From Vitrella brassicaformis CCMP3155 (lineage: Eukaryota; Protista; Chromerida), in NCBI GenBank assembly GCA_001179505.1, contig CDMY01000299.1:1-64000 (forward strand): a stretch of 64,000 bases of DNA. Direction: 5' to 3'. Positions 28,122 through 64,000 of the stretch are shown in pieces. A program made the translations under genes and the position numbers. A model generated the notes under the pieces. That model did not search any database and was not told where the DNA came from. It saw nothing but the letters and a program-made list of their open reading frames with translations. The first letter of the stretch is position 1, and every line of letters starts with the position of its first letter.

Positions 28122-28586
28122 GATAGGACTGAACTGTACAGGTCGCAGGTGACAGGTAATAGGTGACATGTGATATCGGCAGCCGATAGGTAGCTAGGGA
28201 TGTGGCTTAGTAAATAGGTCGTGCATGCATTTATGCATTTGTCCTTTGCAGACGGTTTTTGTGTATGTACATACTTGTCTGTCTGTCCGTCTGTCTGTAT
28301 GTACGTATGTACGTATGTATGTAACTGTTGATGGATGGACGGATGAGCTGTGCGAAATGGAAAGAGGAGAACGGCGCGAAATGATCGACAGATGGCCGTG
28401 TGCGAGTCAAGACGCTCTGTTTGGCCGATGGAGACACTCACGAAAAGCAGTCGGGATACAGACAAGACAGACAGACAAGACAGACAAGACAGACAAGACA
28501 GACAAAGAGATTGAAGTCGGAACCCTAGCGGCCGTCTTCCGTTTTCTCTTGCGCAGCCTCGCCTCCCCCGAGAGTACCATGTGTAG

Positions 28587-28848
28587 TGGTCAATGTTGGC
28601 GATCCTAGCCCTGGCCGCACGGGCAACATTCTGGCAGAGACATTCGTGTATGCTGGGATCAGTGTAATTGCTCGAAGCGCTGTTGTGGCCCCTTTCATCA
28701 CTGCGTCCGAGAGGCTTAGAGCAACGCAGACATCTCCGCGGATGGAGACATCTCCGCGACTGGAGACATCTCTAGTACCGCGGGTACGCCTCCGCTCACA
28801 TCCTGCGCTGTACGCAAACCGCGGCTGCCTCTCGGTGTCAGCCACTAG
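28587..28848 (+). pseudogene. Orphan, frameshifted copy of the beta-repeat exon of the downstream fibre-like gene; contains an 18-nt tandem repeat at 28728-28780
   Basis: Phase-1 acceptor then VNVGDPSPGRTGNILAE.., like the exon LSVGDPDP..GRTGDIVAE. The DISADGDISATGDISS repeats are in a different frame. Confidence 0.5.
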
Positions 28849-28908
28849 CGGCCCTGAATTTACGAGGGTCGCTATATTTACGACGCGTTAACGGTCGCGT
28901 ACAGCACT

Positions 28909-29782
28909 TTGCCTGCCGAGCATCCTCTGTCAGCGGTCACTCTCCGCCTTTCGCTCGTCATCGCTGTGTGTTTCGCCCTCTACGCCCTACCCCGGGCTGA
29001 CGGCCAAGAATGCTCCAAAGCAACATGTAGGTGTACGCAGGCCACACACGGCACAGACAATCACCCAGACGACTTATTCGCCCTCGCGTGTGTGTGCTGT
29101 TCGTGCAGGCTTGATAGCTGGCAACCCGATTCAAGGGGTTGGTACAGGTGGGATAGCAGCTGAACGGCTAATCATTGCCGAAGGGGGTCTCTTGTTGGGG
29201 GGTGAGTGGGACCGCGAAGCCGACTTGCTTGTTGGTCATGGCAGGGCGCGGGTCCCCCGTGGGGAAGTTATTGCCAGAAGTAAGCAGCAAGGAGCGGCAG
29301 GTCCTTTTTCGTCACTGTGCTGCTGCCTTCATGCAGGCTTGATTGCTGGCGACACGTCTGGCGACACAGCGGCGAGTGTTGATCCCGGTGACGTGGCAGC
29401 TAGCAACAACGTTATTGTTCTTGGCGACGAAGTGCGGGCCACCCGTGCGGAAGTCAAAGCCAGAAGTAAGCAGCATGTTGCAGCAGGTCCTGTCGCCCGC
29501 TTCACTCTGCGTGTGCGCGTGTGTCGGTTTGTGTGTGTTTCCAGGCATGACCGTCGGTAGCCCTGACCGTAGAATCTTCGGGTCCGTTGCTGGCTTCGAT
29601 GGCAACATCGTGGCACAGAACTCCATAATTGCGAACAGGGTTCAGGCCCAACGGGATTTGCAAGTTGGTAATTCTCTATTTGGTAACTCTGTGTTTATTG
29701 ATGGTGACTCGGTGCGGGCCGAAAGTGCGGAAGTGAGAGCCAGAAGTAAGCAACGAAGAGCGGCAGGTCCTGTCGTCACTGC

Positions 29783-29818
<36 letters not shown>

Positions 29819-30585
29819 TGTGTGCGTGTGTCTTCCAGGCCTGTCTGTCGGCGATCCTGACCCTTTGCGCTTTACTACTGGCCGCACTGGCGACATCGTG
29901 GCAGAGAAAGGCGTGTTCGCCGATTGGATCCAGTCTTCGAATAGTCTTGCAGAGGGAGATATCACTGCATTCCGGACCGTTAGAGGAGTCCAAGGGTGCA
30001 GATGCGGCGGGCTGACCATTCCGGGGGACGTTGTTGAAGTGAGCGAAACCGACGACCAGCCGCCGTCATCCTTCGAAGAGTGGGGCGGGAGGAACCGATC
30101 AGCGGCGTACGAGGCGAGGCCTTCAGGCAGCTGCCTGTCCACACCAACCCACACAACAGGCTGACGCTGGCCGCCCAGGACGTCAGCCGCCTCTTCCCAT
30201 CGGCAGTGGGGACATTCGAAGACAATTATCAGCCGGAGGAGGGCGGCAAGGGGCGGCCGACGAAGCACACGACGATTGACCTGACCCAGCTGATCTTCAC
30301 GCAGATGTCCGTCATCCAAGACCTCCAAGCCCATGCCTCTGACCTCCAGGCCCGTGCGTCTGTCATCCCTGACCTCCAGGCCCGCATCGCCCGTCTGAAG
30401 AATGCGCTTGCCACACTCCCAGGTATCACGGCCATCATGCAGGACGCGCACGATAGCCAAACGAGCTCACGTGTGTGTCTGTCTGTGTCTCTGTGTGGCT
30501 TGTTGGTGTAGGCCAAGGCGGCAAGAGGGGCAAGGGCGCCGGTGGTCCACCCTCAGTTGTCGGCGGGAAGGGCGGCAAGAAGTGA
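28909..30585 (+). CDS. Secreted tail-fibre-like protein: signal peptide, degenerate Gly/Val/Ile beta-repeats, C-terminal peptidase-S74/intramolecular-chaperone-like domain with coiled coil
   Basis: Signal LSLVIAVCFALYALPRADG/QEC. Exons 29109-29279, 29337-29465, 29545-29745, 29839-~30106, 30160-30422, 30511-30585. LAAQDVSRLFPSAV..TIDLTQLIFTQMSVIQDLQA..LQARIARLKN resembles the S74 C-half. No in-frame ATG found, so the start is uncertain. Confidence 0.68.
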
Positions 30586-32032
30586 GATGTCTATCTGTGT
30601 GTGTGAGTGAGTGATGAGTGTCTCGGTGTCTCCTCGAGTACGTATATCTTGCCGTGTGAGCAAGTGCGCACTTGTATGGTATGGATCCTGTGGTGCGACA
30701 GGAACGTTCCTCTGCCCTGACTGACTGGAGAGAGGCGAATTAATGGAGAGGGCGGCCTGGCCTGGCGGGGTGCTCATCGGGAGTCTGTGTCTGTGACTGA
30801 TGCGTGTGCGTCGCCGTTGTTTATTTGTCCGTATGCGTGCGTTATTTGTCCGTCTCCGACACACATGCAAAGGATGCAGCTGTAGTGTGTGCACATGCGG
30901 ACAAAAAATAGCAACACGTTCTCACGTGCATCGGACTTCATTTGTGATTTTATTAGTGTGTTGTATGGTATGGCCTGGACCGTGTGGTGACGCTTTTCTT
31001 CGCTCTCACTTGAGAGAGAGGCGAGTCAGTGGAGGGGGGCCTGGCCTGCTGAGGGGCTCATATTATTTTATTTTGTTTTATTTTCGCCAATCCGATTAGA
31101 CTTTTCGTGTTTGTACAACGAACTGCCCCATCGGTCAACTGGTTGAGTGCGTGCCGTGTGCAAGTGTGACGGTCTCTCGTTCAATCCATCCCCCGTCTCC
31201 CTTGTACAGAATACACACACACACACACACACAGAGACACAGACACAGACACAGACAGAGAGACAGAGAGAGAGACATGTATCCACCTCACGTTGGGTGT
31301 CGCAGCGGCGTGGATGAAGAGGCAGTGGGGCAGCAAAGTGCAAGAGACAGTGGAAGGGTAGGCGTGGGGTCGGGGCTTCATGCTCACATACTGCTGCTGT
31401 CGCTGCTGGCTGTTTCTCTCTCAGCATGTTTGCGTCGTGTTGTGGCGAAGGCATGACACCCACACGAGGAGGGATTGACCTCGTCTCTCCCCTGCTGAGT
31501 GCCATGCTGCCGCCTGACGTATCACAACCGCCGCAAGACACATTGCTTTGCGCTGTGCATCGCTTCTCAACCGTTGGGGCGGGTGTGAGAGTCAGTGTCT
31601 CGATGAACTCGGTCGTTTGGTGATGGCGTCAGGAGGGGGCTGCTTGTGTACAGTGAGAGCCGGGCCAAATTGGTGGGTGTCTCTGTATGTGTCAAGCTGT
31701 TCATCTGTACGTGAGCCAGTCGGACACTCCAGTGACAGGCTTGCTATCTGCACCGAGTTGTGCGATGACGTCCGCCCACCCACACATCCACTCACAGACG
31801 TGGTTGTCCCCACACACAGACATGGTTGTCCATCTGTCGGTGTGGCTGGGAGGGTCTTTCCGGCTCACACTGCCTCAGTCAACGTGTCTGCGGGCTGACT
31901 GGCTGGTCAGCACGAGGAACCATCAACTCATGCAGAATGAAGCGGGAAGACGCCACTCGAAGAAGATCAGTCACAATATGACGTTTGCCACCTCAGTCAG
32001 TGACGGCACTCAACTGAGCCCTCAGCCTCTCA

Positions 32033-47700: not shown

Positions 47701-48097
47701 CAGCCGCTTCCAGCACTGACACACCACACACCTCACACCTTTCCCGCATGTGTCTGTGGCTGTGTGCAGCTCTTACGATGATCGCCTCCGCACGGCAGTG
47801 GACGAGCAGGCCGTCCGCCGTCTGCAGGCCGACATCAACTCATCCCTGCAGGACGTCGTGGCCGCCCTCGACCACCTGCACACCACCGGCCGTCGGTGCC
47901 AGGCGAGGCTGGTGGACCTGGAGGATCAGAGGAAGTGTGTGGTGTGCACCGAGAGGAGCCCATGTGTCGTGTTCCACCCCTGCAGCCACATGTGCATGTG
48001 TGCGGGCTGCTGGTCGCGGAGCAGACAGAGACACCGCCAGCCGACCTGCCCCATGTGCCGCGCTGATGTCGTGTCGCACACACAGATCAACGCATGA
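44794..48097 (+). CDS. Signal peptide - ankyrin repeats - TM segments - coiled coil - C3HC4 RING (probable membrane E3 ligase)
   Basis: MWRILPVTFLLFAALCC signal; GNSVLHHAV, NALHMAL and SLHWA ankyrin motifs; hydrophobic segments at 46290-46520; CVVC..PCSHMCMCAGC..CPMCR RING. Confidence 0.85.
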
Positions 48098-48591
48098 AAG
48101 GCCGGCCGGCAGAGAGACCGACAGACAGACAGACACCTGTGTCCATCCATCCGTCCATCGGTTCTGTGCTGTACAGTTTGTGTTTTGGGATGCTCCATGG
48201 ATGGATGGATGGATGGATGGATTGTTCGGCGACGTTCATTCAGCCCACGCGGGACGTAACGCCTCTGTGATCGATGCATGTGTGTTGAATCCGACATCCA
48301 TGCACCGCACCATGAAAGGTCTCAGTCGTTCAGCCCATGGTGCACATGAAGCCCGCCCCCGCCCCTCGCGCATCCGTGTGTTTCGCTCACACACCCACAC
48401 CCACACAGACAAAGAGTCAGGTTGTTCCCGACCCTCCCCCTGAGATCTCCCATCTGTGTGCAGCCTCATCTCGCCCACCAGACGCACACCACTCGACACA
48501 CGCTGTCTGTCTCTATCTTACTCAATGGCCAGCAGAGAGCGTGAGCAGCCAGTGTGGCAGCCCATGGTGAACTGGTCCGCCACCAGCCCTC

Positions 48592-63400: not shown

Positions 63401-64000
63401 CCTGCCCCACGCCTGACTGCCCTTCCACTGTCTCAGACACTCTGCTAATCCCCCACTTCAGCTTCAGCCGTGCTGCGATGCGCCCCGTGTGTTGGATACA
63501 TCTCTGTCTCTCTCACTCTAGGTGTGTGTGCGTGTCTGTGTGTGCGCGTGTCTGTGTGATTGCATTCAGCAAATTTAAACACGTGCACACGTGAGGCATT
63601 GAGACAGTGGACAGGACCATTTGCACGCACATCGCGGCATTTGGTGCACTCGTACTTCTGAATGAACACACAGTCACCGCACGACGTCTGCACACTGACT
63701 GCAGCAGCCATACACACACCCAGGTCGACGGCAGCAGGCAGGTCCTATAGTTCCCCACGCCACACACACAGGCAAAGAGCAAAACAAATCGATCAAATAA
63801 CAGAGAGGGAGAGAGAGGCCATACACACAAATGACTGCTGTCTGTCTATGGACACTCACACAAAACTACAATCCGACCCAACCAGCAACCGATGCGCGAA
63901 CAAGGTGTCCAATGGCGCCAAAATTGCCACGCCCGAAGGCCGACATGGCACCGACCTCTCCCTCGCCCCGTGCCTCCCTCCTCAGCCAAGACGGAGGAGA

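What the first reader, a model, noticed from the sequence alone, without database searches (positions are those of the whole stretch)
28909..30585. Secreted phage-tail-fibre-like protein with a C-terminal S74/intramolecular-chaperone-like domain in a eukaryote
Seen: signal peptide, then short beta-strand repeats (GNIVAQNSIIANRVQA, GDIVAEKGVFAD, GDITAFRTV, GDVAASNNV), then LAAQDVSRLFPSAV..TIDLTQLIFTQMSVIQDLQA and a heptad coiled coil. Established: phage tail fibres/endosialidases and MYRF use a C-terminal S74 chaperone (GxIAQEV..FPEAV..VDY..L..AIQEL) to trimerise a triple beta-helix and then self-cleave at an S-D-x-R-x-K motif. The canonical SDxRLK is not evident (VSETDDQ), so this may be a non-cleaving variant. 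Inference: an intron-containing, domesticated trimeric fibre or adhesin.
Basis: partly seen in the sequence, partly recalled or inferred. Interest (0 to 1): 0.75.

Follow-up and report, generated by a model that had tools for sequence, protein, structure and literature searches.

The report
Broken copy of algal fibre gene
This is a transcribed but disabled copy (start codon lost, 5-base frameshift) of a gene family in the coral-associated alga Vitrella brassicaformis. The family joins a secreted beta-strand stalk to a distant, probably non-cutting relative of the phage tail-fibre "chaperone" cap, and the scan has already met it on other DNA.

Summary
The window is Vitrella brassicaformis CCMP3155 contig CDMY01000299.1, positions 1-64000.

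**Cap homology.** The C-terminal part is a divergent Peptidase_S74/ICA domain.
- The window's own piece hits the C-terminal end of a phage tail-fibre profile at E 2e-4.
- The family profile reaches Vitrella proteins that pass Pfam PF13884.
- hhalign gives 96.4% probability.
- Fold searches put the MyRF and phage chaperone domains on top.
- The catalytic Ser is kept (SETDDQ), but the Lys at i+5 is Gln.

Three transcript assemblies run unbroken through 29839-30422, so there is no intron at 30040-30160.

**This copy carries two lesions.**
- A tandem 5-nt duplication (CGAGG x2, 30110-30119) is absent from both close paralogues. It puts the cap out of frame, and the stalk frame stops at TAG 30162-30164.
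- The paralogues' ATG is CTG here (28927-28929). Exon 1 has no in-frame ATG.

**The deposited model does not rescue it.** CEM00784.1 bridges both lesions with two introns that have no RNA support.

**Best reading:** a young, still transcribed pseudogene, or at most a capless remnant. The scan has reported intact members of this family on other DNA several times, including the neighbour 544 bases past the window's end.

The parts
28873..28879 (+). TATA-like element (TATATTT), about 30 nt upstream of the transcript 5' ends
   Evidence: Read from the sequence. Three transcript assemblies begin at 28909-28915. Promoter role is inferred.
28909..29026 (+). Exon 1: signal-peptide-like hydrophobic segment, with no in-frame ATG. 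CTG at 28927-28929 stands where the paralogues have their start ATG.
   Evidence: RNA contigs X8 and X12 and the JGI transcript L004 start here. Alignment A2 with L001. ATG scan. Paralogue N-termini.
29027..29108 (+). Intron 1 (82 nt, GT..AG)
   Evidence: Joint 29026/29109 in X8 and X12 and in L004.
29109..29279 (+). Exon 2: repeat exon, phase 1-1, 171 nt, starts LIAGNP
29337..29465 (+). Exon 3: repeat exon, phase 1-1, 129 nt, starts LIAGD. It looks like a duplicate of the exon-2 unit. Intron 2 is 29280-29336.
   Evidence: Joint 29279/29337 in X8. Repeat families D1 and D3.
29545..29745 (+). Exon 4: repeat exon, phase 1-1, 201 nt. Intron 3 is 29466-29544.
   Evidence: Joint 29465/29545 in X8 and X12..
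29839..30023 (+). Exon 5, first part: last stalk repeats, ending in the CxCG motif. Intron 4 is 29746-29838.
   Evidence: X8 record 23 and X12 record 11 join 29745/29839. Alignment A6.
30042..30059 (+). SETDDQ (frame 0): the positional equivalent of the S74 cleavage motif S-D-x-R-x-K. Ser is kept and Lys is replaced by Gln.
   Evidence: Alignments A3, A5 and A6. P0010 reads SDSRNQ and P0022 reads SDEKFK. Dyad definition from PMC8326128.
30110..30119 (+). Tandem 5-nt duplication CGAGG-CGAGG. One copy is extra relative to both close paralogues and shifts the cap into frame 2.
   Evidence: Alignments. Present, with no gaps, in DNA-like contigs X1 and X3, in RNA contig X8 record 23, and in the JGI transcript L004.
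30162..30164 (+). Premature stop (TAG) of the stalk reading frame
   Evidence: The transcript-derived proteins P0001 and P0028 end here.
30116..30422 (+). S74/ICA-like cap core plus heptad helix, readable only in frame 2 and out of frame with the stalk
   Evidence: phrog_1980 tail fibre, C-terminal end, E 2e-4. 92% DNA identity to paralogue L001. Family profile and fold evidence.
30423..30511 (+). Intron 5 (89 nt, GT..AG)
   Evidence: Joint 30420/30510 with cut +2 in X8 and X12. L004.
30512..30585 (+). Exon 6 coding part: Gly/Lys-rich basic tail and TGA. The 3' UTR runs on to at least 31245.
   Evidence: Same tail in P0002 and P0003.
28784..28920 (+). Intron found only in the deposited model CEM00784.1. 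It brings in ATG 28742 and has no RNA support.
   Evidence: P0026. X8 and X12 have zero depth upstream of 28909, and their contigs include 28909-28920. L004 starts at 28909. It has a GAG acceptor.
30039..30091 (+). 53-nt intron found only in model CEM00784.1. It would bridge the frameshift and has no RNA support.
   Evidence: P0026. X8 record 23 and L004 are unbroken here. P0001 and P0028 read straight through. GAG acceptor, with 5 pyrimidines in the last 20 nt against 10-12 in the real introns.

Best explanation
The locus is a young pseudogene that is still transcribed and spliced. At most it yields a capless remnant. It belongs to a family found so far almost only in Vitrella brassicaformis.

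Intact members have this order of parts:
- a signal peptide;
- a Cys-containing IAGNP motif;
- a stalk of short GD(I/V)VA-type beta-strand repeats, built from duplicated phase 1-1 exon units;
- a CxCG motif;
- a divergent Peptidase_S74/ICA cap with a C-terminal helix and a basic Gly/Lys tail.

By analogy with phage tail fibres and MyRF, the cap in intact members should bring three chains together. With Gln in place of the catalytic Lys it probably stays attached. Both points are inferred.

In this copy the initiator ATG has become CTG. A tandem 5-nt duplication upstream of the cap core shifts the frame, so ribosomes in the stalk frame stop at 30162-30164 and the cap is not translated as part of the protein. 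The cap shows no extra decay, so the lesions are recent or the region is refreshed by gene conversion.
For: Identity and family:
- The window is CDMY01000299.1 at the same coordinates.
- The paralogues P0002 and P0003 have one continuous ORF from stalk to cap.

Frameshift:
- The 5-nt CGAGG duplication is present only in the window copy.
- It is seen without gaps in DNA-like contigs of two runs and in an RNA contig, and in a JGI transcript contig.
- The transcript-derived proteins P0001 (A0A7S1KCS5) and P0028 stop at TAG 30164. The JGI contig carries the cap tail as a second ORF, P0027.

Start codon:
- CTG replaces ATG.
- Exon 1 has no in-frame ATG, and the first ATG opens a short out-of-frame ORF.
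- All three transcript assemblies begin at 28909-28915.

Splicing:
- Five introns are confirmed.
- The two extra introns of model CEM00784.1 are unsupported and have atypical GAG acceptors.

Cap homology:
- PHROG tail-fibre C-termini: E 2e-4 for the window's own piece, 1e-5 for P0009, 2e-14 for P0022.
- The cap profile finds P0021 and P0022, and both pass PF13884.
- hhalign gives 96.4% probability, E 1e-9.
- In the ESM Atlas, all 30 feature hits are PF13884 clusters.
- Foldseek on PDB ranks MyRF ICA, 3gud, 4uw8 and 3gw6 on top. VIA Z is 5.6-4.0 over 89-109 residues.
- BFVD gives 8 hits at E<=1e-3, and all the named ones are ICA or tail-fibre proteins.

Lys to Gln. K592A abolishes MyRF cleavage (PMC8326128).
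Against: - The locus is transcribed and correctly spliced, at contig depth similar to its paralogues.
- The out-of-frame cap has fewer lineage-specific codon changes than the two intact paralogues (2, against 10 and 9, after the shift). A long-dead gene would not look like this.
- CUG initiation exists in eukaryotes.
- Logan contigs drop rare variants, so a minor intact allele or a minor spliced isoform cannot be excluded.
- All the runs probably come from one culture strain.
Confidence: 0.7

Rival explanations
1. The stalk frame is still translated from the CTG or TTG codon. This would give a 300-odd-residue capless beta-solenoid protein that folds and works without the S74-like cap.
For: - The stalk ORF of 314 codons is open through five correctly spliced exons.
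- The AF2 monomer model gives a single-chain beta-solenoid with pLDDT 70-85 over about 100 residues.
- The RNA is present.
Against: - Exon 1 has no AUG. The CTG has a poor context (C at -3, T at +4), and the leader would be under 20 nt.
- An out-of-frame AUG at 29010 lies downstream and would capture scanning ribosomes.
- In known S74 systems the cap is needed for folding of the upstream part (established knowledge for endosialidase).
- The stop lies about 260 nt upstream of the last exon junction, the usual trigger for nonsense-mediated decay.
Confidence: 0.1
2. The deposited model CEM00784.1 (417 aa) is right. Two further introns (28784-28920 and 30039-30091) supply an ATG and bridge the frameshift, giving a functional protein with a shortened cap.
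For: - Both introns have GT..AG ends and restore one ORF.
- Contigs cannot exclude rare isoforms.
Against: - No joint appears at either place in four runs.
- RNA contigs and the JGI transcript run through both sites. There is no RNA depth over the proposed first exon.
- Both introns use GAG acceptors, and the 53-nt one has a purine-rich tail, unlike the five real introns.
- The product would lose the Ser motif and about 17 conserved residues, and would read about 8 residues out of register with all paralogues.
Confidence: 0.07
3. The lesions are an assembly artefact or a polymorphism of the culture, and an intact allele is the functional gene.
For: - The cap shows no decay.
- Contigs hide minor alleles.
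Against: - The 5-nt duplication is seen in independent contig sets of three studies, both DNA-like and RNA, and in a JGI transcript assembly. No alternative form is listed.
- The transcriptome-derived UniProt entry stops at the same TAG.
Confidence: 0.06
4. One reading: an intact, intron-containing, secreted, non-cleaving trimeric fibre is encoded here, with 30160-30422 as a separate exon.
For: - All the sequence modules are present in the DNA.
- The intact paralogues have this architecture.
Against: - No intron lies between 29839 and 30422 in any transcript assembly.
- The proposed splice is not in frame.
- There is no ATG.
Confidence: 0.03
5. Programmed -1 ribosomal frameshifting, or another recoding event, joins the stalk and the cap.
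For: A -1 shift anywhere in 30038-30161 would fuse the two frames, and the cap is undecayed.
Against: - The overlap holds no X XXY YYZ slippery heptamer, even a relaxed one.
- The paralogues need no shift.
- The RNA is identical to the DNA, so there is no editing.
Confidence: 0.02

Closest known systems
Vitrella brassicaformis paralogues CEM00796.1 (P0003; same contig, 64540-65819, minus strand) and P0002 (CDMY01000316.1), named 'Peptidase S74 domain-containing protein' by UniRef
   Same: - Same order of parts: signal peptide, IAGNP motif, GD(I/V)VA repeats, CxCG, S-x-T-D-x-Q, AEWGGRNRS..YEAFRQL, LAAQDVSRLFPSAV, TIDLTQLIFTQMSVIQDL, heptads, and a Gly/Lys tail.
- Cap DNA is 91-92% identical.
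- Intron positions are shared.
   Different: - The window copy has CTG for ATG, an extra CGAGG that breaks the frame, and an extra LIAG-type exon unit.
- The stalk exons are only 49-68% identical in DNA, less than introns 1, 3 and 5.
Intramolecular chaperone / auto-processing domain (Pfam PF13884 Peptidase_S74; endosialidase endoNF 3gw6, GA-1 3gud, T5 pb1 4uw8, MyRF ICA 7dc3)
   Same: - It sits at the C-terminal end of a beta-rich stalk.
- It has the G-x-I-A-Q-E-V..FP-x-A-V-like core, the '..ID...L......V.QEL' helix and a following helix.
- The fold search ranks these structures first.
- The Ser of the cleavage motif is kept.
   Different: - It scores below Pfam's threshold directly.
- The catalytic Lys at i+5 is Gln, and Asp/Arg are not kept in this copy.
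- An acidic or Gly-rich insert lies between the FPSAV strand and the TIDLTQL helix.
- It is a spliced nuclear gene of a eukaryote.
- In this copy it is out of frame.
Canonical S74 proteins of Vitrella itself (CEM34855.1 = P0022, CEL94072.1 = P0021)
   Same: - Same organism.
- Both are found by the cap profile (E 8e-4 and 5.5e-5 over 1.84 billion proteins).
- hhalign probability 96.4%.
   Different: - They pass PF13884 (57.5 and 38.4 bits).
- P0022 keeps S-D-E-K-F-K with the Lys.
- They have no GD(I/V)VA stalk of this type.

Membership tests
Peptidase_S74 / ICA domain (PF13884, PROSITE ICA) | Direct match to the Pfam model above its gathering score | tested here: not met
   No PF13884 hit at E<=10 for the window's exon translations, for P0001, or for the cap of paralogue P0002.
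Peptidase_S74 / ICA domain (PF13884, PROSITE ICA) | Significant remote homology to bona fide members (profile or transitive) | tested here: met
   - The window piece 30116-30421 hits phrog_1980 (tail fibre, profile positions 372-444 of 449) at E 2e-4.
- The cap profile finds P0021 and P0022, and both pass PF13884.
- hhalign A4 against P0022 gives 96.4% probability, E 1.1e-9.
- The best PDB sequence hit is MyRF 7dc3, aligned on the core motif but not significant, E 0.31.
Peptidase_S74 / ICA domain (PF13884, PROSITE ICA) | ICA fold | tested here: met
   - The model is the cap of paralogue P0002 (about 92% identical), pLDDT 69.
- Foldseek on PDB ranks 1-4 are 7dc3 and 3gud, followed by 4uw8 and 3gw6. 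Probability is 0.96 and E 0.013, which is weak.
- VIA Z is 5.6, 4.6, 4.4 and 4.0 over 89-109 residues.
- BFVD gives 8 hits at E<=1e-3, and all named ones are ICA or tail-fibre proteins.
- Atlas structure rows are PF13884 clusters, including MYRF, with TM 0.62-0.67.
- Support is moderate. A monomer model cannot show the interlaced trimer.
Peptidase_S74 / ICA domain (PF13884, PROSITE ICA) | Ser-Lys catalytic dyad, Ser(i) and Lys(i+5), in S-D-x-R-x-K | tested here: not met
   The window reads S-E-T-D-D-Q (30042-30059). The paralogues read SATDNQ, SDTDNQ and SDSRNQ. Only the canonical P0022 has SDEKFK. The dyad and the K592A result come from PMC8326128.
Peptidase_S74 / ICA domain (PF13884, PROSITE ICA) | Domain translated in one chain with the upstream fibre or stalk | tested here: not met
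   A 5-nt duplication at 30110-30119 puts the core in another frame, and the stalk frame stops at 30162-30164. This holds in both DNA and RNA.
Peptidase_S74 / ICA domain (PF13884, PROSITE ICA) | Homotrimerisation and self-cleavage | not testable with these tools
   No multimer prediction or biochemistry was available. These properties are inferred only from homology.
Vitrella 'beta-repeat stalk + Lys-less S74 cap' family | Shared module order and conserved motifs (IAGNP, GD(I/V)VA repeats, CxCG, AEW..RSAAYEAFRQL, FPSAV, TIDLTQL) | tested here: met
   - Alignments A3, A5 and A6.
- There are 21 representatives at E<=1e-3 in 1.84 billion proteins.
- Every named one is from V. brassicaformis.
Vitrella 'beta-repeat stalk + Lys-less S74 cap' family | Intact ORF with initiator Met and signal peptide | tested here: not met
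   CTG stands at the paralogues' ATG position, and exon 1 has no in-frame ATG. The signal-peptide character was judged by eye only, as no predictor was on hand.

The most novel reading that the evidence does not exclude
The family is a eukaryotic domestication of the phage or giant-virus tail-fibre chaperone cap. It serves as a permanent, non-cleaving three-chain clamp on secreted beta-solenoid stalks that evolve faster than their own introns.

This locus would catch the family's birth-and-death turnover in the act:
- duplication of exon units;
- loss of the start codon;
- a fresh frameshift;
- homogenisation of the cap between copies.

Such turnover is expected of a surface or recognition gene family under conflict.
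Probability: 0.3. Interest if true: 0.55.

Novelty: new variant of a known kind. Interest (0 to 1): 0.3.

Why it matters
- For this locus the result is mainly corrective.
- For the family, the locus adds evidence that Vitrella keeps a small expansion of secreted stalk proteins capped by a Lys-less S74 domain, and that this expansion is private to the lineage so far. Copies are gained, homogenised and lost.
- No paper in the searched library treats these proteins.
- An intact paralogue (P0002 or P0003), not this copy, is the right object for experiments on whether a phage-type cap can act as a permanent trimer clamp in a eukaryote.

Tried and rejected
- **Pfam on single exons and on paralogue caps:** no S74 hit.
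- **phmmer and small-profile searches of PDB:** nothing significant. MyRF came top at E 0.31 with the larger profile.
- **My first idea of a 44-nt intron (29996-30039) restoring the frame:** rejected, because RNA contigs run unbroken there.
rejected for the same reason, and because of its phase.
- **-1 frameshifting:** no slippery heptamer.
- **Other copies in the window:** tblastn found none.
- **Stalk fold:** only weak, generic beta-helix matches (LpxA, tapirin; E>=0.1). The stalk therefore cannot be assigned to any beta-helix family, and I could not tell a single-chain solenoid from a triple beta-helix. The stalk has no PHROG hit.
- **P0017 in the big search:** a PKD-repeat protein and a spurious hit.
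- Exons and ORF pieces were searched by reference, and full-length sequences were taken only from database proteins (P0001, P0026, P0002...). The query was an uninterrupted genomic ORF that includes in-frame intron letters.

Full report
**Where the window comes from.** A word search with an uninterrupted genomic ORF (29343-30161) found two Vitrella brassicaformis proteins. Exact look-ups place the deposited gene model of this locus, CEM00784.1 (P0026), at 28742-30585 of contig CDMY01000299.1 of assembly GCA_001179505.1. Those coordinates equal the window's. Earlier notes of this scan had already named the organism and reported about 11-15 family members on other DNA. I treated these notes as leads and tested the points below myself.

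**Gene structure from RNA.**
- Two of the four runs laid on 28700-30800 are spliced (RNA-like: X8 and X12). The other two are unspliced (DNA-like: X1 and X3).
- The runs confirm five GT..AG introns: 29027-29108, 29280-29336, 29466-29544, 29746-29838 and 30423-30511.
- A JGI transcript contig (L004, 2481 nt) shows the same five joints. It starts exactly at 28909 and runs to 31245.
- The three repeat exons are 171, 129 and 201 nt long and are all phase 1-1.
- An 81-nt unit that spans exon end, donor and the first intron bases occurs three times at 72-75% identity. The exon starts are repeated too. The stalk therefore grew by tandem duplication of exon-intron units.

- X8 record 23 joins 29745 to 29839 and then runs to 30206 with no gap and no mismatch.
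- L004 covers 29839-30423 in one piece.
- There is no intron at 30040-30160, and that splice would not be in phase anyway.

**First lesion: the frameshift.**
- In paralogues P0002 (locus L001) and P0003 (locus L003, on the same contig 544 nt beyond the window) the stalk runs into the cap in one frame...EWGGRNRSSAYEAFRQLPVH....
- Against both paralogues the window has one extra CGAGG, forming a tandem pair at 30110-30119.
- The stalk frame therefore reads ...AAYEARPSGS... and stops at TAG 30162-30164. The cap core is readable only in frame 2, which is open from 30038.
- The duplication is present in the DNA-like contigs of two studies, in the RNA contig of a third, and in the JGI transcript.
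- The transcriptome-derived UniProt entry A0A7S1KCS5 (P0001) and JGI's P0028 both end at that TAG. JGI calls the cap tail as a second ORF, P0027.

**Second lesion: the start codon.**
- The paralogue's ATG aligns with CTG at 28927-28929. P0003 and P0013 also have Met at this position.
- Exon 1 has no in-frame ATG. Its only ATG (29010) is out of frame.
- All three transcript assemblies begin at 28909-28915, about 30 nt after a TATATTT.

**The deposited model hides both lesions.**
- The 417-residue model CEM00784.1 bridges both lesions with two extra introns: 28784-28920, which brings in an upstream ATG, and 30039-30091.
- Neither intron has a joint in any run.
- There is no RNA depth over the proposed first exon.
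- Both use GAG acceptors, and the 53-nt intron has a purine-rich tail. The five real introns use CAG or TAG acceptors.

**Is the cap an S74/ICA domain?** Direct Pfam scans say nothing, and PDB sequence searches are not significant. Other evidence supports distant homology:
- The window's own frame-2 piece hits the C-terminal end of the tail-fibre family phrog_1980 at E 2e-4. Four further tail-fibre PHROGs also match, each at their C-terminal ends.
- A profile of five caps, run over 1.84 billion proteins, finds only 21 representatives. All the named ones are from Vitrella.
- Two of these, P0021 and P0022, pass PF13884 at 38 and 57 bits against a cut-off of 22.
- hhalign of the cap profile against P0022 gives 96.4% probability, E 1e-9.
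- In the ESM Atlas, all 30 feature neighbours are PF13884 clusters, and the structure rows include MYRF.
- An AF2 model of the P0002 cap (pLDDT 69) ranks MyRF ICA 7dc3, GA-1 3gud, T5 4uw8 and endoNF 3gw6 first in PDB. E is 0.013 at best, and VIA Z is 5.6 to 4.0 over 89-109 residues.
- The same model has eight BFVD hits at E<=1e-3, and all the named ones are ICA or tail-fibre proteins.

Homology is well supported, but the relationship is distant.

**The cleavage motif.**
- The motif aligns as SETDDQ (window), SATDNQ, SDTDNQ and SDSRNQ (paralogues), and SDEKFK (canonical P0022).
- Ser is kept and Lys(i+5) is Gln.
- In MyRF the dyad is S587/K592, equivalent to endoNF S911/K916, and K592A abolishes cleavage (PMC8326128).
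- It is therefore inferred that family members do not cut themselves.

**The stalk.**
- AF2 gives an all-beta solenoid with pLDDT 70-85 over about 100 residues.
- Its PDB matches are only weak and generic beta-helix folds.
- Whether the stalk is a single-chain solenoid or a triple helix is open.

**Age of the lesions.**
- After the shift, the window's cap has 2 lineage-specific codon changes, against 10 and 9 in the intact paralogues.
- Cap DNA is 91-92% identical between copies and intron 5 is 78-86% identical. The stalk exons are only 49-68% identical, less than introns 1 and 3.
- This pattern fits a very recent inactivation, or gene conversion of the 3' half, together with fast change in the stalk. 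The counts are small.

**Verdict.** This is a real member of a Vitrella family that carries a Lys-less S74 cap, but this copy is disabled. It is ordinary as a locus and mainly useful as a correction of the public model. The family itself has already been reported by this scan from other DNA. No paper on it was found.

Noticed in passing
window 28742-30585 (CEM00784.1): The deposited gene model bridges a lost start codon and a frameshift with two introns (28784-28920 and 30039-30091). These have no RNA support and use atypical GAG acceptors, so the public protein of 417 aa is probably not made.
   Followed up: yes
window 29109-30023 against L001 and L003: The stalk exons are less conserved between paralogues (49-68% DNA identity) than introns 1, 3 and 5 (about 70-86%). 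The cap, intron 5, the last exon and the 3' UTR are 74-92% identical. This suggests fast or diversifying change of the stalk and/or gene conversion of the 3' half.
   Followed up: partly
P0004/P0029, P0007, P0008, P0009, P0011, P0012, P0018, P0019 (family members elsewhere): Many family members end in the same C-terminal pentapeptide GLMAP, often preceded by GPIEALQK. The window's subfamily ends instead in a basic Gly/Lys tail (..GKGGKK). The meaning of either tail is unknown.
   Followed up: no
window 30341-30361 against L001: One 21-nt heptad unit (HASDLQA) is present in the window and in the MMETSP transcript of P0003 (P0030). It is absent from L001 and from the deposited CEM00796.1, so the number of heptads after the cap varies between copies or models.
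   Followed up: partly
L004 620-1204 (JGI transcript contig) against window 29839-30423: The contig has six mismatches. Its second ORF (P0027) reads VETFEDDD as in P0003 and then continues like the window copy. This is probably an assembly collapse between paralogous transcripts. L004 positions 1938-2481 do not match the window.
   Followed up: partly
loose ends and joints at 30404-30511: Contigs of X8 and X12 carry letters of paralogues P0002 (GCGGACACCAG) and P0003 (..CGTCAGCCCACACATCCG) at the last exon junction. Both intact paralogues are therefore expressed in those runs.
   Followed up: partly
P0013 (CEM25440.1, another contig): This family member ends inside the cap, just after FPSAVRTY. 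It may be another broken or mis-modelled copy.
   Followed up: no
window 47754-48128 and 63606-64000 (minus strand) against L001 4802-5890: Sequences flanking the paralogue on CDMY01000316.1, including an ankyrin-repeat gene, have 69-83% identical counterparts in the window 17-34 kb away. These may be dispersed repeats or remnants of a segmental duplication.
   Followed up: no
run X10 and X14-X16: Marine sediment metagenomes from 2025 hold 13-56% of the sampled words of this locus. Vitrella-like DNA with near-identical sequence therefore occurs in environmental samples.
   Followed up: no
window 29788-29829 and 28230-28520: A (GT)n microsatellite lies in intron 4. GACA/GACAGACA-type simple repeats lie upstream of the gene.
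   Followed up: no
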